Of a stretch of DNA of 64,000 bases, positions 6,233-64,000 are shown piece after piece. Below the pieces are notes generated by a model. The model ran no database searches. It had not been told where the DNA came from and saw only the letters and a program-made list of their open reading frames with translations. How positions within the stretch are numbered: position 1 is the stretch's first letter; every line of letters begins with the position of its first letter. The position numbers were made by a program, and so were the translations under genes. Source of the stretch: Podarcis erhardii. Its lineage: Eukaryota. The stretch lies in assembly GCA_964252035.1 (NCBI GenBank), contig OZ176212.1, one strand, 5' to 3'.

Positions 6233-6344
6233 ATGCAGAAGGAGGAGCTGGGAATGGATGAAAATCGCAACCCAGAGGAGGAGCTGCGTCTCCTTGGTGG
6301 AAAGAAGGAAAAATGCCACAACCTCAGCAACCGCATCCGGACAG
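6233..6344 (+). CDS. NUFIP2-like coding exon 1 (MQKEELGMDENRNPEEELRLLGGKKEKCHNLSNRIRT/G)
   Basis: ATG in good context (GGCCATGC), donor CAG|GTAACT. Phase 1 puts exon 2 in the NUFIP2-like frame. Confidence 0.75.
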
Positions 6345-9300
6345 GTAACTTAAACTGCATCCAGTATTTTATCTTCTTCTAAGTCACTTCTACGAAGTCA
6401 CTTCTGGTCCTCCAGAAAATGTTGGACCCCAATTCCCACGAGCACTAAGTCAGCATGACCATTGGTCAGGGATGATGGAAGTTGTAGTCCAGCAACATCT
6501 GGAGAGCCACAAGTACCCCAACCCTTCACCATCGCCAACTCAAGACTGGCTACTAAAAACCCAGCTTCTTGTGCACCCAGAGCTTTGGTGTTGGTGCTTA
6601 GCATTTTGAAACATTTCCTTTAGTTCCCAACGACCTCAGCAGATCCTTGCCCTTATCAATCCATTCACACACACCCCAAACTCCTTGCATACATCTGTTA
6701 TCCATTTAATCCTAAACTGAACTCCTGGGACAAGCAAGCTTTTTTCACCACTAGAGCGCATCCTTATTTCAATTTCCTTTACCTCAGCCCTATAGTGTCT
6801 ATCTGATTTGTGGAGCTGTGAACCCCCATCCCCCAAGCTAAGTTTCCTGCTCCCCCCCCCCAAAAAAAAGATTCAGACAGCCCATGTTGGGAATCCTACC
6901 CTAAACCATCAGCTGCTGCATCTCCACAGAATCATGCAGACTTGCCCCTTACCTGGTAAATCTCAACTTACTGGATCGCACTCCCTTCCCAGAGTTTGTT
7001 TCCTTTTCCTTACTGGGGCGGGTCCTATTTGGCTATTAATTCAGTGGCTCTGGTTTGATTAACTGCCTTTTGTAGCATGCATCTAAGTTCTAGCTGTCCT
7101 TAATGCATCTAAATGTTGAAAATAAAACCTTCTTTCTGTCACGCAGGGGGTGGAGCAGAGCTGGGCTACAGGCCAAGCCAGGTCTCCAGAGAAGGTGTGT
7201 TGTACTGAACTGGGATTGGGCTTTCCCCTTTTCCTTTCTGTCATGCTTTTTCTGCATGTTTTTCTGTTCCAGAGGTGGCTGCACCTCAGTGCTGGGTGAG
7301 GTACATTCATTCAGAGAACCTAGAGCCCTGAATGCCCACCCTCTATGCTCCCCATCTTCTCTTCCCTGTTGAAAAGATGTGGAGAAGTGATTATCTGCCA
7401 CCGTGCTTCTTTACTAGATACCCATGTGGAAAAAGTAGCATGTTCTTCATATCCCTTTCCTCCTCCTGTTACTCTCCTGGGGTATACTTAGGAGAGGAAT
7501 GAAGGCCTACAGATGGGAAAACGAGGACTCTTTAATTCTCTGGGCAGCAAGGCCAGAGCCCAGTGGCTTACAGGAAGGGATCCTAGAATTATTGGGAAAG
7601 GGTTTGAGGAACCTGAAATTGGTTAGGGCTTGAGAGAAGGAATCTCATAGGTTTGAGTTCTTCAGCATGAACACCTCTGGTTCCATTCCCCCCCTTTGCT
7701 AATCACAATGCAGAGAAGCTTGGAAACTTGAAGACAGCATGTTTTGAATGCTAAATAACCAGAAAAGCGGGGAGTGGGCTAAACCAACCTCCGAAGTGGA
7801 ATTTTCATATGATCTCCTGATGTTGCTGAACTACAACTTCCGTCAGCCCCTGTCAGTATGGCCATAAAGATGCAAAATGTGGTTCAGCAGTTTCTGGAGG
7901 GCAAAAGGTTCCTTGTACTTGTCTTAGAGTTTATAATTCATTAATAAATATCAGAAGAGGAATTCCCCCCCCCCATTTTATTGACTAAAGATCACTGTTT
8001 TGGAATTGACTGAGTTAGCAGCACGGAGAGGGGTTTTGAAATCACTTAAGTGATGTGAAGATTTTAGCCACCTGCACACCCCAGATAAACGACCTCAAGG
8101 GTATTTTAACCCATGGGCTATCTGCCTTATCTATGACCTGTTGACCCCAAACTGAGAGGTGAATGTGTCTGCATTCCAGATAAATGAAAACCAGAAATAT
8201 GTTCAAATATTTAGATATCATATTTAAGCACCTTTTAATCCCCCAACTTTCTTACCAAAACTCCAAACACTAACTGAGCAGTCTGGTATTTTGGGAGGGT
8301 TGGAATGAACTGCGCTGAGGCACCATTTTTGTTGATGGTGCACTTGACAAGAGTTAACATAAGCTCCCTACCTGCCGAAATAAAAAATGGGGTTGCTGCG
8401 GTGCTTACATTCTAGGTGTGAGAGGGTGACAAAGGGACGTGAGACAGGCATGGTCTTCACCCTTCCTCTTCTTCCTCTTCAGGTGCCTGGGAGTCCAACG
8501 GGTATACTGCTCCCTCTGAGATAGCTGACGAACCCAGTGTTCCCCTGAGCCCTTCCAACAGCCTCAACATCCGCAATCTCCAGTTGTCTGAGCGGGACCC
8601 TCCTGTTGCCCACCATCCCCACCGCTACCCTCATCGCTTTTACCATGCCCGCCCCTTCCATGCTACAGCATACCGCAAGACCTACCGAGGCAGCCCCTCA
8701 GACCGCAAGGAATGGGGACCTAGCACAAACGGCCATCACTGTGCTCCTGAGAGCATCTCCAACGGGCGGTGGCAGCACCGGCGCCGCGGCTATTCCGACC
8801 CACCCTCCCCGTCGTCGTCTCCCGAATCCGAACGAGGCAGCACCATCAAAGCCAGTGAGAAGCCTGCCGCCACATCTAATGCCGCCAACACAGCCAACGA
8901 GGATTCTGGGAAGGAAACATGGTCGCTCTTCCGGCCACTTCCCGCTTTCCCTGTCGATAGCAGCAGTGCCCGGATCATCCCCAAGATCTCTTATGCCAGC
9001 AAGCTGAAAGAGAACCTGGATCAACCGGGGAAAGCCTGCCATGTTCCTGCCTCAGCCGTCCGCACCACCAATAGCCTCCCCAACTGTGTCTTGGCGCCAC
9101 CCCCAAGTAGCCCCCCGCCATCTGACAGCAGTCGGCAACAGCACCTGGGAGCCATCTTTCAGAATGAGTGGGGCCTCTCCTTTATCAACGAGCCGGGGGC
9201 TGGGCATGGAGGGGGTGGCGGGACGGCACCAGACGTGGATGAACGAGATGCAGATGCTGGAGCATCCTGGGAGAAAATGGAAGTTAGCGACTGGCAGGCT

Positions 9301-11128
9301 GCAAAAAATTACCATCTGGACGGTAAGGTGCTGGAAGGAGCCCAGTCATTGGGCAAGAGGGCAAGGGAGGAGAACCAGTGCATGTGTGTTGAGGCTTGGG
9401 AGCTGTTCCATAGGTAGCTGGACATAGTCAAGAGAGAAGGGGTGGAAGACACAAGGAAATGCTTCACTTGGAAAGCTAGGGATGTTTGTGGAGATGGTGA
9501 GTGAAGGGACAGTCACACAGCACAAAGAACTTTTGCAGTTCATGAAAGTGGAGAGGTGTTGGGTAGTATTGGCTGTCAGAAGAAATAAAGGACAATCTTT
9601 TCACTGCTCTGAGGTTGAATTCTACTATAGTTTACATTTGCTCTACAGACTAGGGCATGAATTACTTTGGGTAGAAGATGATCAAATAGCCTATCCCTAC
9701 CTTTTCTGATTACTTTGTCAGCTATTGTTTTTAGAAGGCTAAAGAGGTAGTTATAGATGGATATCATTTAGCTCCCTCATAATTTTAAACATTGCTCCAG
9801 AGAGCACAGATTCCCACATCCAGTTTTATGTAGCTTGGGAAAAGGTTTGGATGGGCATATGACCAGTGCACTGAGACCCCAACTTTTCTCAGTGTGGCTG
9901 AACTTTCGGGGCATTGTCTTGAGAAGTGAGCAGCTTCAGCTGTGCTGGAGGGTCTTAGGGTACTGGGGCTTATTTACAAACAGTGCTTGGCTTCTTCTAA
10001 TTTCCCTTTTCCCTCCCCCCCCCTTCTAATACAGAGTGGAGACATATATGGGAGCTACACAGTCAAGGTAAGCAAATGGAGGTGCCTGGGCCTAAATCAG
10101 TGGCTTCATAAATATGACCTTTAGGGCTCAACAGTGGGCTGGATAGCTTCATGTTAAAGGGGGTATGAAGATTTGCAGTAATGTACAACAATGTGAAGTG
10201 GAAGGGAGCAGAGTCCTAGGACAGGGATGTGACTCTAAGAATTGTGGGTGTGTAATTCATACTTTCCAATCCTTGCCATATATTCAGTTGTGTCTCCCTC
10301 TCTACTGTACCACACATGCAAAAAACAAACAAAAACCCACAAATTTAATCTGACCACTCGTATTTTGAACATATCCAGCCTTTTGTGAGGATTGCTTTCA
10401 GAAGCTGAGGGGCACTGATTCAACATTTTAATACTGTGTCTTTTCGTGGTTTGCTTTTTAATGTTGTGCCCTAGATGTGTTTGAGTGCATGTGCTCCATA
10501 GCTTTGAAGCCCTAACTGGTAGGAGTTGCTGGCTTTTGATCATCTAAAACAAGTTTAAAATTACACTTTGAAAATGCTTCTGACCCCACATCATTTGCCT
10601 GGAGAACTTGAGTCGGTGACACTGAAGACAAGTGCCACTGCCAGCCTGGGCCCATGAGCCAGGCAGCCAGGCAGGTTTTCTATTCATGTAGTAGCAGGCA
10701 GGAGCAGGTAGATGCTATCTGAAAAACTGGGGTGATTGGTTCTGTGCAGTATGGGGAAGTGAATAAACTGGGCCTTATGAAGTTGTGTGATGGGAGATAG
10801 GAAAGAGAAGTACAGCTGCCGAAATCCACAACTATCTGGTGTTGGATATGGTATGGAGCTGTCTTAAACAATTCAACCAAATCACAAAAGAGCTGCATAT
10901 GTGGGAGCAGATTAATGAAGGGTCTGTTCTGTGGCCAGCCATTGAGGATAGCGGGGGGAAGAGTGGGGCTTCGGGCAGGGGTGTGTGTGTGTGTGTGTGT
11001 GTGTACACACATTATCTATGGCACATCTCCCTTCAAGGCATTGTTCCTGTTGCCATCACTTTTTCTTTTTCCATGTAGATCCTAGCAGAGTGACGGTCTA
11101 CACAGACACCTTCGATGGGAAGGGTTAA
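6233..11128 (+). CDS. NUFIP2-like protein (compact paralogue of nuclear FMR1-interacting protein 2), 4 coding exons, 344 aa
   Basis: Exons 6233..6344, 8483..9322, 10035..10067, 11079..11128. All introns are GT-AG and phase 1; total 1035 nt with one open frame. NUFIP2-type blocks: TGAWESNG, WSLFRPLPAFPVDSSSARIIPKISYASKLKENL, QQHLGAIFQNEWGLSFINEPGAG, DWQAAKNYHLDEWRHIWELHSQDPSRVTVY. Confidence 0.88.
8483..9322 (+). CDS. NUFIP2-like coding exon 2
   Basis: Polypyrimidine acceptor CTTCCTCTTCAG|, donor GACG|GTAAGG. Contains most of ORF 8584..9417 and the PKISYASK and IFQNEWGLSFINEP blocks. Confidence 0.92.
10035..10067 (+). CDS. NUFIP2-like 33-nt coding exon 3 (E-WRHIWELHSQ-D)
   Basis: Acceptor CCCTTCTAATACAG|, donor CAAG|GTAAGC. 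Aligns to NUFIP2 EMESIWNLQKQD. Confidence 0.88.
10980..11003. repeat. (GT)n microsatellite
   Basis: About 12 GT units in NUFIP2-like intron 3. Confidence 0.9.
11079..11128 (+). CDS. NUFIP2-like terminal coding exon (D-PSRVTVYTDTFDGKG*)
   Basis: Acceptor TTTTCTTTTTCCATGTAG|, stop TAA 11126-11128. Aligns to NUFIP2 DPKRIITYNEAMD. Confidence 0.85.
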
Positions 11129-12779: not shown

Positions 12780-13200
12780 TTGTGGTAGCTCTATGCTCTT
12801 CGGAAGACTCTCCTCTATGGTCCCGAGCAGCCGTTATACGGGAAGGCGCACGGCCTCCTCTCTTCCGAGGCCTAAGTCGATGACGTGATTTACAGTGTAG
12901 GGAGCAGCGCTGTTTCTATGGCGGGAGGGTAGCGCGAGGCGCGTGCGCGCCTGCGCGTCACTCCAAAGCGCCCATTCGCCCGCGGATTGAGAGCGGCGCG
13001 GAGGAGTCTCGCCTGCGCCTGCGCGCGAGAGTAATACCTGATAGGATTCCTTTGCAGGAGTTAGGAAATGGGTGTGCGCAGCTGCCTCTTAAAGGGGCAG
13101 AATCCTCGAGTAAAAGGGGAAGTCGCCTGAGCGCCAGCCTGGAGGGCAGTAGAGAACAGGACGGAGGTAAGATAAGGTTGCACCTTTCTTAACTGTGTGC
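12780..13200. promoter_or_regulatory. CpG-island promoter with non-coding first exon (donor at 13166/13167); putative shared promoter of the Harbinger-derived gene and TMEM219
   Basis: CpG-dense. NRF1-like GCGCCTGCGC motifs (about 12947 and 13015), TGACGTGA 12881-12888, strong donor GGAG|GTAAGA. No other promoter-like CpG island before the TMEM219 ATG apart from the CpG-rich transposase ORF. Confidence 0.7.
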
Positions 13201-13947
13201 CATTCTTGCATTTCCCCCCCCCCCGGGTCTGTTCTCCATCTGGTTATTCTCATCTAAATCCTTTTGTTCAGCTATTTTGGAGCAAGGATTTAGGTTTCGA
13301 AGAATGTAGCCCCTTGGGGGATAAAATAGGGGGGGGGGTTGCCTTCGTTTGCTGCCTCACACCAAGTCAGCCCATTGGTCCATCTTGTATTGTTTACTCT
13401 GACTGGCAGCTGCTCTCCAGGGTCTTTCTCAAGCTGAACGCTTTTAGCTGCATGGCCAGAGGTCGAACTTGCATTTTCTGAATGCCAAATACTGAATTTG
13501 CCTCTGAACGATAGCACCTCTCAGTCAGGGAAAGTCACAATTTGTATCCTATACATGCCGCAATCCTTTGCATATACAGTATATGCCCAGAAGTGAGTTC
13601 CACAGTGGAGCTTATTTCTTAGTAAGTATGCATAGAATTGCAACCTTGTGTGCATACGTTGAGAGAGATTAATACACTCCTGTATTTCTGGAGCTTAGAC
13701 TATTTACAAGTGAATGCATTTTTTTTCTCAGTGCACAGCTGAAAAAGAAGTTATATGTCTACCTTCCATGTGAAATACTGCATTTCCCCAGTATCATTAA
13801 TTATTCCTAAAGCACTTCTTAGCAAGCAATCCTGGTTTTCAGTGCTCTTCTTGTCACTATGGAAGTGAGTCAGCCACATCATTGTTTCTCACCATGCTTG
13901 ATGGACTTTTGCAATTAAGAAAGTTTCTACCTGGATCTCCTAACCCT

Positions 13948-14160
13948 AATGTGGTACTGCGGGTGATGTGCCAGACTAGGACCAGGGAGACCAAGATCCA
14001 AACCCCCATTCAACTATGAAGCTCACAGGGTGGTCAGTCACTGTCTTTCAGCCTTACCTCACCCACAGGGTTGTTGTGAAGATAAAATGCAGGGACAGCT
14101 ACGTATGCCTCTTTGAGCTCCTTGGAGGAAAGGTGGGATATTATGTATTAAACGAATAAT
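13948..14160 (+). mobile_element. Squamate SINE (CORE/MIR-like body, LINE-derived tail)
   Basis: CACAGGGTTGTTGTGAAGATAAAATG core and CTTTGAGCTCCTTGGAGGAAAGGTGGGATAT...AAT tail. Ends approximate. Confidence 0.55.
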
Positions 14161-14976
14161 ACTGCTGTACCACACTAACCATCTTCACATGTGCTTACTC
14201 ATATTTCTCTCTAACCCAAAAGCTTATTTTGAGCTGGGAGCTTAAGCTGCCGGGAACCTGTTTTGAGTGCTACCACTGAACCATGAAATAACAGTAAGCT
14301 GTGCTGATTGGTTCTCATCTGGCAAGGGGGCTCTGGTTTGCACATGGCATGCTGCCTTTTGGCCTTCCCTCCCCAGACTCAATAGCTGAGCAGGCAGTTT
14401 TCGTAAAGATAGGGCAGGATTCAGTTATCCTATTTCACTAGCAGACAAAGACTTCTACTAGCCTAATGGGGCTTCACCCACCTTACGCCTCTCCCAAATC
14501 TGCTCTGAGAACCCACAGAACAGATCACAGGGAGGAGAGGGGAAATTGTTCCATCAAGCAAGCAGCAGACAGAACAATCTCCTTAGCGCTAGCCAGAATT
14601 CCACCCATGGTTGTTGTTTTTAAAATCACAATTGTCCCCTCAGTAATTTAATAAGAGAAAGCTGGTGTAGTGTAGTGCCTGAGAGACTGAGCTATGAGTC
14701 AGAAGTCAGGACTGGTTTGGATCTTACCTCTGCCCTGAGCTCACAAGGTGCCTTGGGGAAGCAATTCTCCCTCAACTCACACCTGTTGCCGTATTGGGGG
14801 ATAATGCAGATTTACAGACTTACAACTGGATGATGCATATGAACTACTGTGAGCACTTGAAAGCAGTCTAGGAATATGAGGTATTGTTATTAACAGGACA
14901 AAAGACACCTCTACAGTTGTAATGTGAGCAGGCTGTGTGCTCCCATTGCACATTTGTGTCTGTGCATTCACACGTG

Positions 14977-15112
14977 CAGGCACCCCCAAACTCGGCCCGC
15001 CAGCTGTTTTGGGACTACAACTCCCATCATCCCTAGCTAACAGGAGCAGTGGTCAGGGATGGTAGGGATTGTAGTCCCAAAGCATCTGGAGGGCCAAGTT
15101 TGGGGATGCCTG
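14977..15112. mobile_element. hAT-type MITE, 136 bp
   Basis: TIRs CAGGCACCCCCAAACTCGGCCC / GGGCCAAGTTTGGGGATGCCTG. Flanks CACACGTG / CACATGTA fit a decayed 8-bp TSD (6/8 match). Confidence 0.8.
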
Positions 15113-16816
15113 CACATGTAGGTGCACTTAAGATGAAACACACCTATAGTTTCAACTGTGTGTGTTTGTGTGTGAGAGATGAATGCTGGAGAATGAGAGC
15201 TCTAGTATGTGATTGCTAACGTGATTTTGGTAACAAATTCCCAAAGGCAGGGCCACACCTAGAAAATAGGGACAGATGGGGTGGATAAGGAGTTTCTTGG
15301 TAGATCCTTTGTTAGAGTTTAAACCAAACCACTTTCTGTCTCCAGACTATCTGTCTTTCCATGCCACTATCTTGGCCACCCTTCCCCTCTTCCCTATACC
15401 CAGTCACTGTTCTCTCATCTCTTCCTTGTCTTTGGCAACTGAGTATGGGATGATGATCAGATTAAATGAAGGGCTCTTCTGCCTTTCAAATAAGTATTTA
15501 GAAGATGCAGTGGCTTGTACAGAACTATGTAGGAACCCAGGCTGCAATTGAAGCTGGTACCTCTATCAGTAATGGGGTCCCAAAGCTCTCTCTGTGTGTC
15601 TATGTGGTTTGCATCCAGCCCTAACCATGTTATTATTTAAAAGTAAGTAAGTAAAAGTGAGTTCAGTGCGATTTGCTTCCAACCAAGGATGTGCAGGGTT
15701 GCAACTCTAATGTACTGAGGACACACGGAAAACTGTGTTGCATGAGAAAAATCAATATTCCCTGTGGAAGGGGGAGTGGGGGGGGGTTATTGTAGCAGAG
15801 AACATGTAGATCAGTTCCCAATGTTCTTCATTGTTTTTGTAGTAAGTCAAAGCTGGGCATTAAATGACTTCTGGGCATTTTGCTAAGGATGGTGGAAGAG
15901 CAACTGAACTGAATTATTTGGGTCAGTAGGCCAACAGAACTGCTCTGATTCCGTGAGCTTTAACCACTGAGAACACATTAGCATTCTGCTCATTTCACAG
16001 AAAAGAGGATTTAAAACTGCTCATTTCGCTGTAGTCATGGTTCAAATGGAATATTTGGGGGAAAATAAAATACAGCTGTCTCACTAACTTGAGCAGAGGT
16101 GGAACTCTGGAAAAGTGGTAAGATTTTAAATCTCACAGGATTTACCTCAGAACCTGATTTTCAAGACTCAGCCTAATTGCCTCTGAGCATGTATAGAGCG
16201 CTTTCCCATCACTGCTGAGTAACTCCTGTTGGGCTGAGCACACCTGGAACAAGCAGGGATGCTGAACCTCTGAAGCCAATTAAGTTACAAATCAGATATC
16301 AGGTGGTTGACCAGTTTTGAGATAAAGTCCTAGCTTCAGAGAGTAGGCAGTTACTGGAGATGGGTGTGGGTTGATGTAAGACGAACACTATGGGAGTAAT
16401 ATAGGAATGTGATTGAGGGGTGCTCAGCTGGAAGACTATTTATGGGCCTGGAGGTAATCTGGGATGGGGAAGACATAGGCAACTCTGAAACCTTTAAGAA
16501 TTTTGAAATGTAGAATGGGCAGAGATTGGACCTTTCCCAAGTGTGGTGGAATAAATTTCTTATGCTCCATCTATTTTGCTGTTTAGAAAAGGCCTTCACG
16601 GTTGAAATACAAATATGATTCTGTTACAATATATTGCCCTTCAGCTCAACAGCACCTTTCCGGCTGAAGCACAAGGACTGGTGATGTCTCGTCCCTGCCC
16701 AGCGACATCATCCCTGCCTTGGCTAAGGGTGTAGCAAGGGGAAGGTTTTTCTCGTAGCGCCTTCACGCCACTTCCCCCCAAGCCTTCTGCAAGCTTCTTC
16801 AAGAGCGGCCGGATAA

Positions 16817-18172
16817 ATGGAGCAGGAGTGCCTGGCTCTGGTTGCTGCCTGCGTCCAAACTTCCCAGTTGCTAGTGCAGCAATGGATGCTCAACAGGCGC
16901 ACGGTGATTTTCGCCATAGCGAGGATTCTGCAGAGGAGGCGCTTCCGCAGGTCGGCTGCGGTGCTGAGGCGCATCCTCTCAGCCAGCGTCCGCCGCAAGA
17001 GAGCCCTGCTGCGGCTTCACCGGAACGCCATCGTCTCCGTGGTCACCATGGTGTACTCGTCTTCCCCCGCGCTGCACTACGAGCACGAGCTGATGGCCTT
17101 GTCTGAGCGCTCCCACTGGATGCTTCCGAGGTGCAGCGAATGGTGGGAGCGGATGATCAACTCCGAGCAGGATGACAAGTGCTGGATTTCCTTGTTCAGG
17201 ATGTCGCGGTCCACGCTGATGTACATCGCCGAGGAGCTGCGCCCTGCCCTGCAGCGCCGGGACACGGGCATGCGGTCTCACATCCCTGTGGAGAAAAGAG
17301 TCGCCATGACTATCTGGAAGCTGGCGCACCACGACAGCTACAAGACCGTCTCGGAGCTCTTCGGGGTGGGGATTTCGTCAGCCTGCTCAATATTTGAAGA
17401 GGTGTGCGAGGAAATAAACAGCAGGCTGCTGACCCAGATCATTAAGCTGGGAGACCCGCAGGAGATCATTGAGGGCTTCAAGGAGATGGGTTTCCCCAAT
17501 TGCCTCGGCGCAATCGATGCAATCCACATCTCCATCCTCTGTCCCCCGTTCTCTGCCGACTCCTACATTAATTGCAAGGGTTTCTATTCTATGGTGCTGC
17601 AGGCCCTGGTGGACAGCAAATCCCGGTTCACAGATATCTACGTCGGCTTTCCGGAGAGGTCCCACGACTCCCGCATCTTGCACAACTCTCCGTTCTTCAA
17701 CAGCATGGACGAAGGCACTTTTGGGCCACAGGCGCCAACGGTGCTAGAAGGTGTTTCGATGACCCCTGTCATAATTGGGGATCCTGCCTATCCACTTCGC
17801 CCCTGGCTCATGAAGCCATACCCAGCGCCAAAAACCGGGGCCCAGGAAAAATTCAACGAGCGGCTCGCTAAGTGCCGAGCGTGTGTGGAGAGAGCTTTTG
17901 GGGTCCTGAGAGCTCGCTGGAGGTGCCTGCAGATGAGGCTGGATGTGAGGGAGAAGCTCATTCCTGTGGTCATAGCCACCTGCTGTATCCTGCACAATAT
18001 CTGCGAGATCAAAGGGGATGAGTTGCTGGAGCCGTTGGAAAGCCCCGCAGTGGCTGAAAGCCAGAATGCTTCAGCCAGGCCAAGGGTGCCCTTGTCAGAG
18101 GCTGGACTGACCAAGAGAGCTTGCCAGATCAGGGCTGCTTATTGCTCTTATTTTGAAAAGAACCCTGTGTAA
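16817..18172 (+). CDS. PIF/Harbinger transposase-derived protein (HARBI1/ALP1-like, DDE_Tnp_4 family), intronless, 451 aa, probably domesticated
   Basis: Uninterrupted ORF. HTH-type region FRMSRSTLMYIAEELRP...IPVEKRVAMTIWKLA...VSELFGVGISSA. Acidic residues D234 (GAIDAIH), D284 (RSHDS), D322 (IGDPAYPLRPWLMKPY), E358 (VERAFGVLRARWRCL), and C-terminal CCILHNIC. Not the HARBI1 orthologue by motif sequence or locus. Confidence 0.93.
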   Translation: MEQECLALVAACVQTSQLLVQQWMLNRRTVIFAIARILQRRRFRRSAAVLRRILSASVRRKRALLRLHRNAIVSVVTMVYSSSPALHYEHELMALSERSHWMLPRCSEWWERMINSEQDDKCWISLFRMSRSTLMYIAEELRPALQRRDTGMRSHIPVEKRVAMTIWKLAHHDSYKTVSELFGVGISSACSIFEEVCEEINSRLLTQIIKLGDPQEIIEGFKEMGFPNCLGAIDAIHISILCPPFSADSYINCKGFYSMVLQALVDSKSRFTDIYVGFPERSHDSRILHNSPFFNSMDEGTFGPQAPTVLEGVSMTPVIIGDPAYPLRPWLMKPYPAPKTGAQEKFNERLAKCRACVERAFGVLRARWRCLQMRLDVREKLIPVVIATCCILHNICEIKGDELLEPLESPAVAESQNASARPRVPLSEAGLTKRACQIRAAYCSYFEKNPV

Positions 18173-18303
18173 AGTGGGGTGGGGGTGGGGGGAAACAAAG
18201 CAGGCTCGTTTGTCCATGTAATTTCTTGGGTGTGTATGACCTGGTTGTAGTATACAGACCCTGTATTGCTGATGCCTAGCATGTGGTAGTTTTCTACATG
18301 TCA

Positions 18304-18309
18304 AATAAA
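18304..18309 (+). terminator. PolyA signal of the Harbinger-derived gene
   Basis: AATAAA 132 nt after the stop, followed by a GT/T-rich downstream sequence. Confidence 0.6.
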
Positions 18310-18656
18310 AAGGCTATGATTTTGAGTGGTCTGCTGCTATATTTTCTAAGAGATGGGATTTTTTAAAAGGTAATTGCTATGGTAAAAGCATAGGGTGGGA
18401 CTTGAACCAATGATGGTGTAAAATAGAAGAGTGAACAGTTTTTCTTAAAGGGGATTTATATACCTACCACTCTATCTCTAAAACATTAACAAAAATACAT
18501 GGTATACCTGCCTAATGAAAATGGAAGTTCATGGACAAATTTTCTAGCCTGTTAGAAAGTACACTCTGGTTGCAATCCTATGTACACTTACCTGGGACTA
18601 CGTTTTACTGAACTCTCTGGGACTTTCTGTAGAATCCTATCATGTTCACCCAGAAA

Positions 18657-18844
18657 CATAGCTGTCAACTTTCAGATTTGAAAATAAGGGATCAGCAGCC
18701 TCGAAAATAAGGGACCAGCAGGCTCACCTGTCCTGGGGACAGTCTACGGGATATCTAACAATCCGGGATAGCAGCGGGAAGCAGCAGGAAACGGTGCTGG
18801 AATAAGGGAATTTCCCACCAAAAAAGGGAAGGTTGACAGCTATG
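18657..18844. mobile_element. Young hAT-type MITE, 188 bp
   Basis: Perfect 13-bp TIRs CATAGCTGTCAAC / GTTGACAGCTATG and perfect 8-bp TSD CCCAGAAA (18649-18656, 18845-18852). Internal repeat GAAAATAAGGGA; CpGs retained. Confidence 0.92.
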
Positions 18845-20979
18845 CCCAGAAATATCTCAAGATGTTTCAGTTGGCTAGTCTAGTATCCAGATGCTTGTGG
18901 GGGAAATCAACAAAGATCATGAAGATGCATGCTACTCCAGCCTCTCCAATACTAAATGCAGGTTTTATGCTACTTTGCTACATGAAGCTATCGTCTTCTG
19001 GGTGTCATCTAAAAGCTGTTTCAGTGTTGCAGGTTCATCTGGACACCCAGGGATTTTTAAGATGAGACACATGGATTCAAGGGGAATGGCTGACGTGAGA
19101 TTTATATGAACCAGTAACCATGGATCCACATAATGAAACAGTTTAGACAGTCTTCTTAAGCTAAGATACGAACAATACTTTTGTTCACACTAAAACCAGG
19201 AATCTTCTAATCATAATTTCCTGGTTTGGTAGGGTCGCCATGTTTCAAAAAGTGAAAACACTAAGTTTTATTTTGTTTTTTTGCAAAATTGCAAAAATGG
19301 CTATTTTTTAAGGGAAATTGACACTGCTGGCTTAACTGGTTTAATTGCAGCTTTCAGGGAAAAGTGAAGGGGCTGTGTTCAGGGGCAAAAAGCTTATGCA
19401 TTTTTCAGCCTAATAAGTCTAATAAGATATTACTAATAAGATATGACTGTCTGAATGCATGTGATAACTCCCACTTTCCATATCTAGGCAGACATGGTTT
19501 TATCCTGGCTTGCAAACCAGAAATGTCAGTAACATTGTTTCTCAGTTCAGATGTCAAGCGAAGCTGATTTAACAAACTGGGAATCTTCCCCTCCTATGGG
19601 GCACATGAGAGAGGAAGCACCCATACTCATGGTTCGCTCCTGCTCTTAAAAAAAAATAAAAATCACTGAGCTGTTTTACGAAAGGAAACAACAAAAACAC
19701 TTGTCCTTCCATATTTAAGATTTTTCTAGGAAAGTATATTTTTTCAATTGGCAGGGAAGCCAAACACAGAATAAATGCATTCATGATGATGGTCATTGTG
19801 CTTAATGCCCTGTTTGCTAATTGCTAGGGATGGTCTTCAAGGGGAGACTTCTGAAGTGATAGTGCAAAGCAGTAACCGGTGTACTTTGGTTGCAAACATG
19901 TTCTGCTGATCCTTTCTTTCACAATGCAATATTGTGCAGACACACAGAATGTGTAGAAAGTGGCTTTTGACAATTACGTGCCATTTGCCACAACTACAAC
20001 GTTGAACAGTTAGTAGGGTCATTTTAACAAAACGGCTTTAAGCAAAAACTGTAGCATGTTCCTCCACTTCAAAGCAAAAAGAGGATTTGTTGCATTTCCT
20101 TTGCTTCCGTAGGCAGCAGTCTAGTGTCACCAGGACTGAATTTGTAGCAGAACTCACCTAAGCTTAGCACTAGAACACAGAGGTTGCTCAAGAGAGTCTC
20201 TGGGTTGTATCCAGCTAAGTTCTACCCTAAAGGAGACCTGAAATTATTGAACCTAAGATAGACTTGTCCATTCAGTTCATTGGGTCTGTTCCGAGTACAG
20301 CTACCACTGGAGACAATCCTCTCCCTCACCACTGAAGGACACTTCCCCTGTTACAAGTACTGGAAACATACAACCCACATTAGAAAATGGGCAACAATCG
20401 CATGTGTAGAATTGTTGCTGCATAAACAGGCTTTGAAGACCACCAGGAGTGTACTTGCCACATGTGATCATCTTTATGTGCTTACCATGATGTTTCTTAC
20501 AGAGGACTTGCCTCCTATGTGTTGTGTAATGTAGGAAGCAATCCAGAAAAACCACAACTCCCCTCCCCCCCCCCCAGCAGCACCACGAACACTCAATCAA
20601 GCAATACATAGCCAAGATCAGGGCTTCTAGGCAGCCTTAAACTCTCCTCCAGCCAATGCCTCTTCATTTAATATGCGATTTAGAAGAAAGATGCTGGGGG
20701 GTGGATATGAAACAGTGGGGTGGGGGGAAGGAGACAAAAAAACAGATTGTCTTAGCCTTTTGAGGACATGGTGGCTGCTATGTGGATCATAGTGGGATGT
20801 GAGAAATCAAAAAGGACCAAGTGTCCCTCAGTTGTCCAGCACTCTATTTTTGAAAGTGTATAAGTTGATTGTTCTGTATTTAGCAGTTACCTTTGGACAC
20901 TTAGGAGGGTGTTGGAGAAGTTGGTTTTGAGGATCACCAGGCAAAATGGCATTAGCAGAACTTTCAGTGTTGGAGAACA

Positions 20980-21260
20980 TCAACAGCTTTGCTGAATCAG
21001 GCCAAAGGTCCATCTAGTCTAGTATCCCCTTTCCTACAGTGGTAAAGTATACACTTCTGGGAAGCTCATAAACAGGCATAGAAGCAATAGCTGTCACGTG
21101 TTATTACTCCCTAGTGACAGTATTATCAGGCATGCTATGTCTTAAGTTTGGAGTTTGTATGTAGACTTTCCTTATACTAATATCAAATCCATTCTCCCAA
21201 GTTTGGATCCTTGTGCAGCTAAAAGCGCATGATGAGTGCACATGGAAGAGTTATTCAGGA
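20980..21260 (+). mobile_element. CR1-type LINE 3' fragment
   Basis: GCTGAATCAGGCCAAAGGTCCATCTAGTCTAGTATCC motif, with related copies at about 21590-21750 (+) and 41030-41280 (-). Family assignment from memory. Confidence 0.45.
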
Positions 21261-23246
21261 AGAACTGAACATGCTCAGTGGCTATAGAAAACTGACTCTC
21301 AGTTGAATGGAGGGATGAATGGACAAGCGGGAGGAGGGAAAATGGAATATCTGGGAAAAGGGTATGGCTGGCTGGCAGGAATTCCAAATAGGAGCCTCCA
21401 TACTACAACTTTTTGTTGCAGGTTCCACTTGTCGTGATTAATAGCTAATGGTAAAACACATTAATTCTCCATGAAAGTGTATTTAATCCATCTATGCTAG
21501 TGCCCATCACCACATCTTGCAGTGTGGCAGGGAACCATTTGTGGGCTTAAAAAGAGCTCATGACCGTGTGAGCACAGCCAAGGGCTAATCTGTATGTTAA
21601 GAATGTATGAAGGGTCTGCTAGATCAGGCCAGTGGCCCATCCAGTTCTCATAGTGGCCAGCCAAATTCCTATCAGAAGTCTGCAAGCAGGGTCTGAGCAC
21701 AACAGCCCTGTCCTCACGTACAGTTCCCTGTAGCTGACATTCCCAGCAGCAAAGGTACAAGAGATCACATGCTGCACAATGATCTTGCTAGCAGTTCACT
21801 GCAGTAACTGCTAGCAAGTTGTGTGATGTAAACAAACCAACGTTGATTTGTGGGATATACAACACAAAACAAGTCTACCATGAAACTACACATTCACATG
21901 CAATTCTTAAGAAATATGGGGAGAAACTCTCACAAGACCAGAAGACTCAAAGGAGGGAAGCCTTATGTAACAAAGGAATGGAACAAAACTTAAGAAATCA
22001 AACAAATGTGGCGTTCAGTTTACCAGTTTATGCTGCTTATTCATTTTGTGGGGGGTTCTCTCTTTTGGTGAATTTTGAAGGCACACACAAAGATCAGCAT
22101 CCCCATATTCTTTTTTAAAAAAACTTTATTTAACAAAGGAAAAACAATGTGATCAACAACAGTGCATCATATGGCACATTATACTTTAAGATTTGACAGA
22201 GATTGTTAAAAATAACCTCCTTATAAAGTTTTCCCCCTTCCTCATTCCCAACAAATAACACCACACTGCGAGAAGACTTGGCAATGATGAGATTGCCATG
22301 TTGGGTGGAGCAAATGAAGCAACTATGGGTTGCAAATATCCAACTTTCTCCTATAATTCCAGCTCTTTCTTTCCAACTTAATTGTGTTGAAATTTGCCAC
22401 CTTCATCAGAAATATAGAGAAGTAGGAAAACCTTACCTGTATATCCTTGAGTGCAACCTTCTTTCATACAAGCAGAGTCATCCAGCCAGTTGCGATGATC
22501 AAGAATCTAGTGGTTGCTAACTTCTAAGTCCCCCCCCCCCCAACGCATAGATTTAGAGCTAATTTAAACAATGAGGTGTATGTAGTGCAGTTTTCCCTGA
22601 GGGCCTTACTATGTCAAGATACACATGGGCGGTGGTTACTTGTCTAAAAACACCCCAGTCAAAATATATTCATTTTATTAATTTTTGAATTGCCTTTCAC
22701 GTGTCTCAATCTGAATTACAATATAAGCAACTAACATACTTTTAAAAGCAATACAAGATGGAGACCTTTTCATCCAGATGGAAATGTTTGTTGAAACAAA
22801 ATGTCTTCAGGTTTTTTTGGAAAGCACATAAAAAATGAATATGAAGTAGCAGTATATCACCTTTCCATTTACGTGGCGATCCTGAGGCAGGGGCAATCTC
22901 AAGGAAACCAATTCCTACTTTATTTTCAGCAAGTTTAGTCCCTTTAGACAACCAGACCGCATGCACGCTGAATATTTAAATAATCACTGAGCAATTTATA
23001 AGATTGAATTAATATCTCTTGGTGTTATTTCCATTCACATTTCTGGGACACAATTTGACTTTTAAAAATTTATTTATTTAATAAAGCAAAGCTTATGATT
23101 GTACCACACAAAATGCAAAGGGGAATAGGTAGCACACCGCCTACCTTTTCCTTACCCTTGATTCTGGCTGTTCCAGCAGATGTTTCAGCTTCTTCTAGTG
23201 CTGGGATGACACTGCAACCTTCTTACCCTCATTCCTAGGGCTGACC

Positions 23247-25104
23247 ATGGTCACCTGCTCCCTGCTGGGCTCCCTGCGTGTCTGCCTGGAGCGACACCCA
23301 CCTCTGGTCACCTTCTTCTTTTGCCTCCTTTCGTTGGCTGTTGCCTTTGTTGGTTTTGCTGCCTACATCCAGTCACATGATGTTCAGAATCCCGATGTCA
23401 AAGAGGTGAGCTAGAGATGATCACCTTAAGTAGAAAATCAGACCAAAATGCTGGGGGTGGAATTGGGTTGTGGTTGTAAAGCACGCATGAGAGACTTTAG
23501 GAGGCAGTGGTGGGTGCTCTACCTTCTCCTTGGTCTCTTACTAACTGTTTAGGCTCAGCAACTGAATGGTTCTCTGACTGAAACTTTCAGGGTGGTTGGG
23601 TATCTTCTCGGATGGAATGCACAGAATGTCCCTAACAATTATGGGCTGTGACGGGTACGTTGGGTGTTCATTGCAGAGGCAGACTTGTGTGATTTATCTT
23701 TTGGCAATTGGTTTTATTTATTACCATTTTCTAACAGACTTGAGAGATTTACCCAAATTTGAACAGCTGCATTGATTTGCTCTCAAAAATAGTGTTGCCT
23801 GTGTTGGCTGCTGTTATCATACCATAATGACCCAAGCTAAACATTCATGAATTACAGAGGGTTGGGTGTTGTTGGTTTTTACAAATACGCTATAAGAAAC
23901 TGTCATTGAAAAGATAGTCCTGAATGGATACTATCACAAGAAGTGGGGAGCAAAAGAATAGGATATTCAACAGTACAAAATTTTTAATTAGTAGGTGCAG
24001 CTATATCTGAAATATTCAACGATCCGGCTGTTCTGAGATGTTTTATGGTACTTTTAAAATACAGTTCCCATCTTTCAATTTTCTAGCTGTTAAGAGCAAA
24101 AGGGAATTTTTAGAGGCAAGATTGGGTGAAATTGGAAAGGTACTTTAAAAGGCAGAAGCAAATGAAAAAAATGCAATCAAGAGAATAGAATCAACTAAGA
24201 GTCAATTCTCATTCCTTTCCCTCCCTCATCTCTAAGGACTGGAATTCTCTGCTAAAGTCTCTGGCACACTTAATGTTCTGTATCCCAAATAAGACGCAGG
24301 AAAGTGCCTTGACACCAGCTCCCTCCACAACCACTGCTGAGACCCCTACAACAGTCTCTGTCATGGTTGGCTTGACCTTTGACCTCCACAATGGCACAGA
24401 TCCTCCCAATGGTACACGTCTAGGTCTGACAGTCACTGGGGAAAAACTGGGTCTCAAAGGTGAGTGATTTCTCACTCCTGACCAATTGCAACATCCTCCC
24501 AAAGATTTCAGGAACTCTGGTTCCGTGTCCGTCTCCCCTTGACCTTTCCTTCCATCAACTTCCAACCACAGGTCCAGATGCCCAGGAATCAATCCACTTC
24601 TTGACTATCATCACGAACTCAGTCTCCCATGAGAACTGCCTTAGCATCACTGCACCTTCATCCCTTCTCCCCAAGACCAGGTGAGCCAAGAGATTTAGTT
24701 TCAAGGAGTTCTTAACCCATTAATGCAATACTCCCATCTTGTCCCCAGACAACCACCTAAATGTGTGATAGAGGAATGGGACATGCACCAAGAAGAGACA
24801 GGAATTTGTTACCAGCCACATTACCAGGCTAATCCTGCCCTGTCCAGCATGCTGGATCAGGTAAGGTGAATGTGGGCAGTGACAGTATCTGGACCTGGGG
24901 ATTCTGGGCTTCTTCAGGATGCAAGCTGGATTCTAAGGGGAGGAGCATTCACTGTTGCACTCCTTTCACTCTCAGGCGGATCGTGCCCTGTGCAGCCAGC
25001 GGCTCCTGATGACCAGTGCTTTCCTTCTCTGCCTCTGTGCCATGCTATGTTGTGCAGCTGGCCTGTGCTATCCTAACCCCAGAGACAAGTGGGGGCAAAT
25101 CTAA
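23247..25104 (+). CDS. TMEM219: TMEM219 (IGFBP-3 receptor), 5 coding exons, 243 aa
   Basis: Exons 23247..23405, 24237..24459, 24572..24680, 24749..24860, 24976..25104; GT-AG, in frame, 732 nt. CLERHPPLVTFFFCLLSLAVAFVGF (TM1), NPDVKEDWNSLLKSL, GEKLGLKG, ALCSQRLLMTSAFLLCLCAMLCCAAGLC (TM2) match TMEM219. Located directly upstream of TAOK2 as in human. Confidence 0.92.

Positions 25105-39746: not shown

Positions 39747-64000
<24,254 letters not shown>

What the first reader, a model, noticed from the sequence alone, without database searches (positions are those of the whole stretch)
16817..18172. Intact, TIR-less PIF/Harbinger transposase-derived gene: candidate new domestication independent of HARBI1
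Seen: a 1356-nt ORF without stops or frameshifts, while nearby TE relics are short non-coding MITEs or decayed fragments. It has splice acceptors upstream and a polyA signal downstream. I found no TIR pair with TWA TSD around it. Established: Harbinger transposases have been domesticated repeatedly (vertebrate HARBI1 with NAIF1; plant ALP1 with ALP2 antagonising PRC2; HDP1 with HDP2 in a DNA-demethylation-linked complex). Human HARBI1 lies beside ATG13, not at this locus, and human 16p11.2 has no known such gene. Inference: a reptile- or squamate-level domestication that may act as a chromatin-complex subunit.
Basis: partly seen in the sequence, partly recalled or inferred. Interest (0 to 1): 0.85.

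Follow-up and report, generated by a model that had tools for sequence, protein, structure and literature searches.

The report
Squamate-wide domesticated Harbinger transposase gene
A jumping-gene enzyme that landed in the first intron of TMEM219 has been kept almost unchanged, at the same spot, in lizards, geckos and snakes, so it is now an unnamed host gene and a second vertebrate Harbinger-derived gene besides HARBI1.

Summary
Window 16817-18172 (+) is an intact 451-codon ORF with a full PIF/Harbinger DDE_Tnp_4 domain and no terminal inverted repeats.

The domestication reading also holds:
- **Orthologues.** 451-aa orthologues with no indels and 94-99% identity occur in geckos, lacertids, an amphisbaenian, iguanians, a cordylid and snakes.
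- **Synteny.** In all five loci fetched the ORF lies upstream of TMEM219 on the same strand. A NUFIP2-like gene lies upstream in four of the five.
- **Selection.** Pairwise dN/dS is 0.012-0.043. The DDE triad (D234, D322, E358) is invariant.
- **Copy number.** Genomic read depth equals that of the unique flanks, so the gene is single-copy.
- **Expression.** RNA contigs of a close relative cover only 16643-18325. They start at a conserved splice acceptor and end 16 nt after AATAAA.
- **Outgroup.** The same interval is empty in two turtles. Tuatara could not be checked.
- **Independence from HARBI1.** HARBI1 is only 20-22% identical. The nearest kin are two other squamate-conserved Harbinger derivatives whose catalytic triad has changed.

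RefSeq mislabels the protein "IGFBP-3 receptor isoform X1", "HARBI1" or "ALP1-like". I found no paper describing it. Its function is untested. My best guess is a nuclear DDE nuclease or DNA-binding factor.

The scan had already noted this ORF on this same window (s1-254831), not on other DNA.

The parts
16817..18172 (+). Complete CDS (451 aa plus stop) of the Harbinger transposase-derived gene
   Evidence: ORF. Pfam DDE_Tnp_4. 94-99% identical 451-aa orthologues across Squamata. dN/dS 0.012-0.043.
16645..18325 (+). Transcribed terminal exon: 172-nt leader, CDS and about 150-nt 3' UTR
   Evidence: RNA contigs of a related species lie on 16643-18325 (X9), 16662-18185 (X3) and 16643-18235 (X1, in pieces). 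Depth is zero in the unique flanks. The acceptor motif TTGCCCTTCAG is conserved in 5 of 6 squamates.
16643..16644 (+). Splice acceptor AG after a pyrimidine tract
   Evidence: Sequence. Two independent RNA contigs begin here. Conserved in window, Lacerta, Rhineura, Anolis and Gekko; Crotalus has another AG 8 nt downstream.
16814..16816 (+). In-frame TAA directly upstream of the ATG, so there is no protein fusion with upstream exons
   Evidence: Sequence. Present in 5 of 6 species.
18304..18309 (+). AATAAA polyadenylation signal
   Evidence: Sequence. The X9 RNA contig ends at 18325. The signal or a close variant is conserved in all six squamates.
16823..17056 (+). N-terminal long basic helix (residues 3-80), absent from HARBI1 and ALP1
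   Evidence: AF2 model, helix 3-80. Fold matches to HARBI1 and ALP1 start at residue 82-118. This is the most constrained part: dN/dS 0.011 for residues 1-110.
17285..17428 (+). Helix-turn-helix region (residues 157-204)
   Evidence: HTH_Tnp_4 match, E=0.0011, below the Pfam cut-off. Helices 158-170, 175-182 and 186-208 in the model.
17513..17998 (+). DDE_Tnp_4 catalytic core (residues 233-394). Triad codons: D234 at 17516-17518, D322 at 17780-17782, E358 at 17888-17890
   Evidence: Pfam. Triad invariant in 16 of 16 squamate orthologues and present as DDE in 43 of 45 more distant family members. The three residues were assigned from their places in the predicted RNase H-like fold.
13039..13166 (+). 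Non-coding exon 1 of the TMEM219 transcription unit; candidate shared 5' exon (inferred)
   Evidence: RNA contigs X1 13039-13166 and X9 13043-13166 end exactly before GTAAGA at 13167. CpG-rich sequence lies upstream at about 12900-13030. The Lacerta TMEM219 gene call starts at the equivalent place.
15870..16040 (.). Conserved non-coding element about 0.7 kb upstream of the terminal exon; possible enhancer or alternative first exon
   Evidence: Alignable to Gekko (82%), Anolis and Rhineura although the surrounding intron is not. Low-depth RNA contigs at 15899-16056 and 16050-16230. No Rfam match.
23247..23411 (+). First coding exon of the host gene TMEM219, whose first intron holds the Harbinger-derived exon
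   Evidence: ORF. tblastn control matches upstream of or within the TMEM219 gene calls in Lacerta, Gekko and turtles. PF14940 gene calls downstream in all loci.

Best explanation
**What it is.** This is a host gene made from a PIF/Harbinger transposase. An element inserted between the non-coding first exon and the first coding exon of TMEM219, in the lineage leading to squamates and after its split from turtles. It lost its ends and any second ORF, and has stayed single-copy and immobile since.

**How it is expressed.** It is expressed as a self-contained terminal exon: acceptor at 16644/16645, a 172-nt leader, its own ATG preceded by an in-frame stop, and its own polyA signal. The exon most probably splices from the TMEM219 5' exon. 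One promoter would then yield either TMEM219 or this unrelated 451-aa protein.

**What is shown.**
- Orthology and synteny across the squamate crown.
- Very strong purifying selection over the whole length.
- Single-copy status.
- Transcription with these exon borders in a close relative.
- An invariant DDE triad.

**What is inferred.** The exon 1 to exon junction was not seen directly. The biochemical role is also inferred, with about 40% confidence. Every module of an active transposase is under strong constraint: the N-terminal helix, the HTH, an intact D234/D322/E358 triad and the C-terminal helix. I therefore propose a nuclear, DNA-binding, metal-dependent DDE nuclease or strand-transfer-like enzyme acting on host DNA or chromatin. 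It probably works with a Myb/SANT-type partner, as HARBI1 does with NAIF1.
For: **Conservation and synteny**
- Intact ORF with a full DDE_Tnp_4 domain.
- The 90%-identity cluster has 44 members. The 15 listed are all 451 aa and come from snakes, geckos, lacertids, Rhineura, Anolis, Pogona and Hemicordylus.
- A 16-sequence alignment shows 97% mean column identity and no indels.
- The ORF sits upstream of TMEM219 on the same strand in Lacerta, Gekko, Crotalus, Anolis and Rhineura. A NUFIP2-like gene is called upstream in four of them. Each protein is found on one contig.

**Selection**
- NG86 dN/dS is 0.012-0.043. dS rises from 0.11 (Lacerta) to 0.57-1.58 (Rhineura, Gekko, Anolis, Crotalus).
- All four protein regions are below 0.05.
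- 289 codon columns vary only synonymously, against 40 with amino-acid change.
- The neighbouring NUFIP2-like exon gives 0.14-0.52.

**Copy number and transcription**
- Genomic run X19 has flat depth 17.3 over the ORF, against 15-20 in the unique flanks and 10^2-10^6 in repeats.
- RNA contigs of a relative that is 96-97% identical cover only 16643-18325.
- By my count, 19 of the 20 listed in-ORF differences fall at third codon positions.
- Acceptor and polyA signal are conserved.
- RefSeq names the 451-aa protein an isoform of the TMEM219 gene in at least 8 species, which implies shared exons in their transcript models.

**Origin**
- No TIRs.
- Turtle loci have the NUFIP2-like gene and TMEM219 adjacent, with no Harbinger match between them at E<=10.
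- HARBI1 is 20-22% identical and ALP1 is 29% identical.
- The triad is invariant here but changed in the two sister squamate clades.
Against: - No read or contig spanning 13166 to 16645 was displayed, so the shared-promoter model rests on contig ends and RefSeq naming. Run X3 showed the terminal exon but no exon-1 contig.
- The RNA evidence comes from a related species, and the runs' RNA label is itself a guess.
- Tuatara, crocodilians and birds were not examined at the locus, so 'squamate-specific' could be 'lepidosaur-wide', or older with loss in turtles.
- No Myb/SANT partner was found in the window or in a search seeded with the Myb domain of the related fusion protein.
- An intact DDE triad does not prove catalysis. 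HARBI1's own activity is still unknown (PMC9392472).
- The triad was assigned from fold position and family invariance, not from an experimental structure.
Confidence: 0.85

Rival explanations
1. Same domesticated gene, but a non-catalytic scaffold. It would act as an adaptor in a chromatin or transcription complex, as plant ALP1 does in PRC2. The acidic triad would be kept for folding or metal-dependent DNA binding rather than cleavage.
For: Known domesticated Harbinger transposases with an assigned role work in chromatin complexes (ALP1-PRC2, PMC4671723; HDP1 in a histone acetyltransferase complex, PMC5339849). ALP1 is the closest Swiss-Prot relative by identity, at 29%. Uniform constraint over the whole length, including the non-catalytic N-terminal helix at dN/dS 0.011, fits a protein with many interaction surfaces.
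Against: ALP1 has DGA in place of DDE (PMC4671723). The two sister squamate clades also changed the triad: E/D/G at the third position in one, and D-G-T/A in the other. This gene keeps D, D and E in 16 of 16 species, which suggests selection on the active site itself.
Confidence: 0.35
2. The domestication is older than squamates. It would be lepidosaur-wide or sauropsid-wide, with the gene secondarily lost from turtles.
For: Tuatara, crocodilian and bird loci could not be fetched. A tuatara orthologue at 90% identity or more would be hidden inside the 44-member cluster, of which only 15 members are listed. The gene evolves so slowly that great age is plausible.
Against: No annotated protein between 54% and 93% identity exists in either protein collection. 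Two turtle species from distant families have a short interval between the NUFIP2-like gene and the first TMEM219 coding exon (1.3-2.7 kb) with no trace of the ORF.
Confidence: 0.3
3. It is just an unusually well-preserved or recently active autonomous Harbinger copy. Alternatively, the high cross-species identity reflects horizontal transfer between squamates.
For: Harbinger elements have been active and horizontally transferred in squamates (PMC8437027). The ORF keeps all transposase modules.
Against: Same flanking genes and orientation in five other species spanning the squamate crown. Single-copy depth. No TIRs and no second ORF. dS grows with phylogenetic distance while dN stays near 0.005-0.03.
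Confidence: 0.01
4. It is a protein isoform of TMEM219 (IGFBP-3 receptor), as RefSeq names it.
For: RefSeq names the protein 'insulin-like growth factor-binding protein 3 receptor isoform X1' in at least 8 species.
Against: An in-frame TAA precedes the ATG. The TMEM219 ATG lies 6.4 kb downstream, at 23247. The protein has only transposase domains and no PF14940 match. At most a non-coding exon is shared.
Confidence: 0.01

Closest known systems
HARBI1 (vertebrate Harbinger transposase-derived 'putative nuclease')
   Same: Both derive from a PIF/Harbinger DDE_Tnp_4 transposase. Both are single-copy and syntenic, lack TIRs, and are under purifying selection. The predicted fold is the same (TM by hit about 0.8). 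From my own knowledge, HARBI1 also retains its triad.
   Different: Only 20-22% identity. This protein is 451 aa against 349 aa, with an extra N-terminal helix of about 80 residues. Its range is squamates, against all jawed vertebrates (PMC9392472). It is therefore an independent domestication, not a HARBI1 duplicate.
ALP1 / ALP1-like (Arabidopsis domesticated Harbinger transposases, PRC2 accessory subunit)
   Same: Closest Swiss-Prot relatives by sequence (29% and 25% identity). Both are domesticated transposases conserved across a large clade.
   Different: ALP1 has DGA instead of DDE (PMC4671723), whereas this gene keeps DDE in every species. A plant and an animal lineage cannot share this domestication event.
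CSB-PGBD3 and other transposase captures by alternative splicing (Cosby et al., bioRxiv 10.1101/2020.05.07.082677)
   Same: A DNA transposon inserted in an intron is used as an alternative 3' terminal exon through an acceptor just upstream of the transposase ORF. The parental transcript persists alongside.
   Different: In those cases host coding exons are fused to the transposase. Here only a non-coding exon can be shared and the protein is pure transposase, so screens for fusion proteins would not list it. That paper's main text contains no 'TMEM219' or 'PIF'.
Two other squamate-conserved Harbinger derivatives found here: the ~485-aa 'ALP1-like' gene and the ~1120-aa KRAB-ZnF-Myb-transposase fusion
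   Same: Same Harbinger lineage in the tree, 41-54% identity. The first is conserved from snakes to geckos and the second between two lizard families.
   Different: Different loci and gene structures. Their catalytic triad is variable or lost. They are much less constrained: 85% snake-gecko identity for the first, 71% agamid-anguid identity for the second, against 94-99% for the window gene.

Membership tests
PIF/Harbinger transposase superfamily (DDE_Tnp_4) | Full-length DDE_Tnp_4 catalytic domain above the Pfam gathering score | tested here: met
   102.2 bits against a cut-off of 24.8, profile 1-158/158.
PIF/Harbinger transposase superfamily (DDE_Tnp_4) | D-D-E acidic triad on the RNase H-like fold | tested here: met
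   D234 lies on strand 1, D322 follows the last core strand, and E358 lies on helix 341-367 of the model. The triad is invariant in 16 orthologues and DDE in 43 of 45 distant members. The assignment was not checked against an experimental structure.
PIF/Harbinger transposase superfamily (DDE_Tnp_4) | N-terminal helix-turn-helix DNA-binding region | tested here: inconclusive
   HTH_Tnp_4 scores 18.9 bits, below the 27-bit cut-off. Three helices are predicted at 158-208.
Autonomous Harbinger transposon | Terminal inverted repeats with a 3-bp TSD flanking the element | tested here: not met
   No bracketing inverted repeat in 13000-22000.
Autonomous Harbinger transposon | Second ORF encoding a Myb/SANT-like DNA-binding protein next to the transposase | tested here: not met
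   No gene is called between the NUFIP2-like gene and TMEM219 other than the ORF. Of the ORFs of 140 aa or more, the eight scanned gave no Myb domain. Short exons were not scanned.
Autonomous Harbinger transposon | Multiple copies per genome | tested here: not met
   Genomic depth of 17.3 equals that of the unique flanks. One contig per protein in each genome looked up.
Domesticated (exapted) transposase gene | Orthologous copy at a fixed syntenic position across deeply diverged species | tested here: met
   Upstream of TMEM219 on the same strand in a lacertid, gecko, viper, anole and amphisbaenian, with a NUFIP2-like gene upstream in four of them.
Domesticated (exapted) transposase gene | Purifying selection on the coding sequence (dN/dS well below 1) | tested here: met
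   0.012-0.043 in 15 pairs. This is pairwise NG86 only; codeml was not run.
Domesticated (exapted) transposase gene | Transcribed as a host mRNA | tested here: met
   RNA contigs are limited to 16643-18325 in three runs of a close relative. The window's own species and the tissue of origin are unknown.
Domesticated (exapted) transposase gene | A host function shown by phenotype or biochemistry | not testable with these tools
   Needs a knock-out, IP-MS or enzyme assay.
HARBI1 orthologue group | About 349 aa and close sequence similarity to vertebrate HARBI1 | tested here: not met
   451 aa, and 20-22% identity to human, mouse, cow, frog and zebrafish HARBI1.
HARBI1 orthologue group | HARBI1 genomic neighbourhood | tested here: not met

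The most novel reading that the evidence does not exclude
Squamates have kept, for roughly 200 million years, a catalytically competent Harbinger DDE enzyme that still cuts or rearranges specific host DNA. This would be programmed cleavage in the manner of RAG or ciliate PiggyMac, or cleavage of related MITEs. Two sister genes from the same transposon lineage would have become non-catalytic regulators, one of them a KRAB-ZnF-Myb-transposase fusion. Together they would form a lineage-specific module born from a single element family.
Probability: 0.12. Interest if true: 0.88.

Novelty: new member of a known kind. Interest (0 to 1): 0.66.

Why it matters
As of 2022, HARBI1 was the only transposase-derived Harbinger gene described in vertebrates (PMC9392472), and its function is still unknown.

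- **A second, independent case.** This one is far more constrained, with dN/dS around 0.02 and no indel across the squamate crown. It keeps an intact active site, so it offers a fresh and genetically tractable way to ask what such enzymes do for a host. Genome editing is established in Anolis sagrei and in geckos (my own knowledge).
- **A capture route that current screens miss.** The transposase becomes an alternative terminal exon that borrows only a promoter and a non-coding exon. Screens for host-transposase fusion proteins would not list it.
- **An annotation error.** RefSeq propagates the label 'IGFBP-3 receptor isoform X1' for this protein through squamate genomes.

Tried and rejected
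- **PDB sequence search and Foldseek against PDB**: no meaningful match below E=1e-3. No Harbinger structure exists to anchor the triad.
- **Rfam over 12.5-23.5 kb**: only weak miRNA-like hits on a palindromic MITE at about 15.0 kb. Nothing on the conserved element at 15.87-16.04 kb.
- **Splice junction.** None of those shown was 13166 to 16645, so the junction stays inferred.
- **Tuatara.** No route was available. The cluster listing shows the same 15 of 44 members each time, and the 50%-identity library hides close orthologues.
- **Xenopus**: TMEM219 is not within 10 kb of the NUFIP2-like gene, so the locus says nothing about polarity.
- **Myb partner.** A search seeded with the Myb domain of the related fusion protein returned only fragments of that same gene. 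The Myb gene upstream of the 485-aa paralogue in a gecko was not found within 10 kb in a snake.
- **Protein-atlas search**: returned generic Harbinger clusters only.
- **Literature**: searches on Harbinger with TMEM219, squamate, domesticated and host-transposase fusion found no description of this gene.
- **Rejected readings:** active transposon, horizontal transfer, TMEM219 protein isoform, HARBI1 paralogue.
Full report
**Observation**

The ORF is real. The ORF listing gives 16817..18172 on the + strand, ATG start, 451 codons. Only one other ORF in the 64-kb window exceeds 300 aa.

Pfam matches DDE_Tnp_4 over the whole profile (residues 233-394, E=2.9e-29). It also matches Plant_tran, and HTH_Tnp_4 below threshold at 157-204.

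No inverted repeat brackets the ORF. An in-frame TAA at 16814-16816 sits directly before the ATG. A pyrimidine tract plus AG lies at 16643-16644, and AATAAA lies at 18304-18309.

**Orthologues**

The best database hit is a 451-aa king cobra protein at 94% identity. The next hits drop to about 48%.

The 90%-identity cluster of that hit has 44 members. The 15 listed are all exactly 451 aa. They come from snakes (Ophiophagus, Notechis, Vipera, Crotalus, Candoia, Thamnophis), geckos (Gekko, Eublepharis, Heteronotia), lacertids (Podarcis, Lacerta), Rhineura, Anolis, Pogona and Hemicordylus.

Aligned with the window protein, they show 97% mean column identity and not one indel. The window is closest to Lacerta agilis (99%) and Podarcis (98%), so it comes from a lacertid.

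RefSeq names are inconsistent: 'IGFBP-3 receptor isoform X1' (that is, TMEM219), 'putative nuclease HARBI1', 'ALP1-like' and 'uncharacterized'.

**Synteny and copy number**

In Lacerta, Gekko, Crotalus, Anolis and Rhineura the ORF lies upstream of TMEM219 on the same strand. A NUFIP2-like gene is called upstream in four of the five (not within the Anolis locus). Each protein is found on one contig.

Outside the ORF, only three things align between the window and gecko or anole:
- about 190 nt just upstream of the ATG,
- a 170-nt element at about 15.87-16.04 kb,
- the TMEM219 exons.

A genomic run of apparently the same species (X19) has flat depth of 17.3 across the ORF. The unique flanks have 15-20, while nearby repeats reach 10^2 to 10^6. 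The gene is single-copy.

**Selection**

Pairwise Nei-Gojobori dN/dS among the six CDS is 0.012-0.043. dS is 0.11 to Lacerta, 0.57 to Rhineura, 0.78 to Gekko, 1.05 to Anolis and 1.58 to Crotalus, so dS grows with distance as vertical descent predicts.

| Region (residues) | dN/dS |
|---|---|
| N-terminus (1-110) | 0.011 |
| HTH region (111-225) | 0.026 |
| DDE core (226-400) | 0.023 |
| C-terminus (401-451) | 0.049 |

Of 451 codon columns, 289 vary only synonymously and 40 change the amino acid. As a local control, the neighbouring NUFIP2-like exon gives 0.14 (to Crotalus) and 0.52 (to Lacerta). These results, together with synteny, exclude a neutral relic, an active element and horizontal transfer.

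**Transcription and gene structure**

Three runs labelled RNA, from a species 96-97% identical to the window, carry contigs on 16643-18325 (X9, 1683 nt), 16662-18185 (X3) and 16643-18235 (X1, in pieces). Depth there is about 7-34, and it is zero in the unique intron stretches on either side.

The 5' border coincides with the AG acceptor. The motif TTGCCCTTCAG is conserved in five of six squamates, and the snake has another AG 8 nt downstream. The 3' border lies 16 nt after AATAAA, and that signal is conserved in all six.

By my count, 19 of the 20 listed in-ORF differences between the window and these contigs fall at third codon positions.

Small RNA contigs also cover 13039-13166 and stop exactly before GTAAGA at 13167. 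CpG-rich sequence lies upstream. This is the non-coding first exon of TMEM219, whose ATG is at 23247.

Exon 1 ends in AG. That would explain why the contigs align two bases past the acceptor, to 16643. No contig spanning the junction was shown, and run X3 lacked an exon-1 contig. The join 13166 to 16645 is therefore an inference. It is supported by RefSeq treating the protein as a TMEM219-gene isoform in at least 8 species.

At the protein level there is no fusion, because the stop codon before the ATG rules it out.

**Age**

In Lepidochelys kempii (two assemblies) and Carettochelys insculpta, the NUFIP2-like gene and TMEM219 are adjacent. Only 1.3-2.7 kb separates the NUFIP2-like gene from the first TMEM219 coding exon.

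tblastn with the 451-aa protein finds nothing in that interval at E<=10, while both control peptides hit. The only turtle hit is a 75-residue fragment at the far upstream end of the Carettochelys locus, outside the interval.

The Xenopus locus has no TMEM219 within 10 kb and is uninformative. Tuatara, crocodilians and birds could not be reached. The insertion is therefore dated after the turtle split and before the squamate crown, with tuatara open.

**Relation to known genes**

An AlphaFold model built on a 74-sequence alignment has pLDDT 81.8 and pTM 0.72. It shows an N-terminal helix at 3-80, an HTH region, an RNase H-like core and a C-terminal helix.

Foldseek against Swiss-Prot gives these identities:

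| Relative | Identity |
|---|---|
| Arabidopsis ALP1 | 29% |
| Arabidopsis ALP1-like | 25% |
| HARBI1 (human, mouse, rat, cow, frog, zebrafish) | 20-22% |
| IS5-type transposases | below that |

All of these alignments begin at residue 82-118, so the N-terminal helix is not shared. The gene is not a HARBI1 duplicate.

By fold position and family-wide invariance, the triad is D234, D322 (in GDxAYPL) and E358 (in VERAFG). It is invariant in all 16 orthologues. ALP1, by contrast, has DGA (PMC4671723).

**The wider lineage (side finding)**

A tree of 45 relatives places the window clade with two other squamate groups.

*The ~485-aa group.* This is a set of 'ALP1-like' proteins from Varanus, Thamnophis, Rhineura, geckos, Anolis and agamids. 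Branches are short and the grouping resembles the species tree. The gene has two coding exons with the same intron position in a snake and a gecko, and snake-gecko identity is 85%. In the gecko it lies just downstream of a Myb_DNA-bind_4 gene. Its catalytic glutamate varies between E, D and G.

*The ~1120-aa group.* This group is the nearest to the window gene. Its proteins carry KRAB, C2H2 fingers, Myb_DNA-bind_4, HTH_Tnp_4 and DDE_Tnp_4 domains (Phrynocephalus and Elgaria). The triad has degenerated to D-G-T/A.

One Harbinger lineage thus seems to have given squamates at least three host genes, and only the TMEM219-nested one keeps DDE. A 2025 preprint notes an 'apparently domesticated' Harbinger of about 200 My beside a squamate TRIM cluster (PMC12262214). 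That is a different locus and probably one of these two relatives.

**Literature**

A 2022 survey lists HARBI1 as the only transposase-derived Harbinger gene in vertebrates, alongside the Myb-derived NAIF1 and MSANTD1-4 (PMC9392472). The host-transposase fusion survey does not mention TMEM219 or PIF in its main text. Searches combining Harbinger with TMEM219, squamate, domesticated and reptiles found no description of this gene. I rate it a new member of a known kind.

**Mechanism**

Shown:
- a single-copy, immobile, transcribed gene under very strong constraint,
- every transposase module intact.

Inferred:
- It is expressed as an alternative terminal exon of the TMEM219 transcription unit, so the two proteins are mutually exclusive products of one pre-mRNA.
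- The protein works as a nuclear DDE nuclease or DNA-binding factor, likely with a Myb/SANT partner. Sister genes that lost or varied the triad suggest that the triad here is kept by selection.

The main rival is a non-catalytic chromatin adaptor in the manner of ALP1. No partner was found in the window or by search, and function was not testable with these tools.

**Earlier scan notes**

Note s1-254831, on this same window, proposed the one-promoter, two-proteins arrangement. My results agree with it in part. Note s1-254802 flagged the NUFIP2-like neighbour, which I used as the synteny anchor and found conserved in squamates, turtles and amphibians.

Noticed in passing
L009:10001-12513 (Thamnophis), L010:10001-13148 (Sphaerodactylus); proteins P0003, P0004, P0006-P0013, P0016: A second squamate-wide Harbinger-derived gene of about 485 aa, labelled 'ALP1-like'. 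It has two coding exons, and the intron after residue 26 is conserved between a snake and a gecko (85% aa identity). The catalytic glutamate varies (E/D/G). In the gecko it sits just downstream of a Myb_DNA-bind_4 gene, which may be a co-domesticated pair.
   Followed up: partly
P0188 (Phrynocephalus, 1125 aa), P0334 (Elgaria, 1116 aa); L013:10001-35816: The nearest relative of the window gene (48-54% identity) is a multi-exon fusion protein: KRAB + C2H2 zinc fingers + Harbinger Myb-like domain + Harbinger transposase. Its triad has degenerated to D-G-T/A. In Elgaria it is flanked by an ABC transporter gene and a ribosomal S12/S23-family gene. It may be the 'domesticated Harbinger' mentioned beside the squamate harbiTRIM cluster (PMC12262214).
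   Followed up: partly
window 15870-16040: A non-coding element of about 170 nt in the TMEM219 first intron is conserved from lacertid to gecko (82%) while the surrounding intron is unalignable. Low-depth RNA contigs overlap it and there is no Rfam match. It could be an enhancer or an alternative first exon for the Harbinger-derived gene.
   Followed up: partly
window 14962-15127: A palindromic MITE-like element (73-nt arms, 82% complementary) reaches summed contig depth above 10^6 in the genomic run and high depth in the RNA runs. It gives weak sub-threshold hits to the mir-5408 and mir-727 models.
   Followed up: no
window 8584-9417 (and about 6233-11128): The NUFIP2-domain paralogue upstream is 69-99% identical across squamates. 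Homologues at 36-50% identity occur in turtles and amphibians, adjacent to TMEM219 in turtles. It evolves much faster than the Harbinger-derived gene (dN/dS 0.14-0.52).
   Followed up: partly
P0050 (Apteryx mantelli, 639 aa): A kiwi protein combines a KRAB box with a Harbinger DDE_Tnp_4 domain (41% identity to the window protein). This may be another KRAB-Harbinger capture, in a bird.
   Followed up: no
window 51995-54322: A 775-aa ORF on the + strand has no Pfam match. This was not verified.
   Followed up: no
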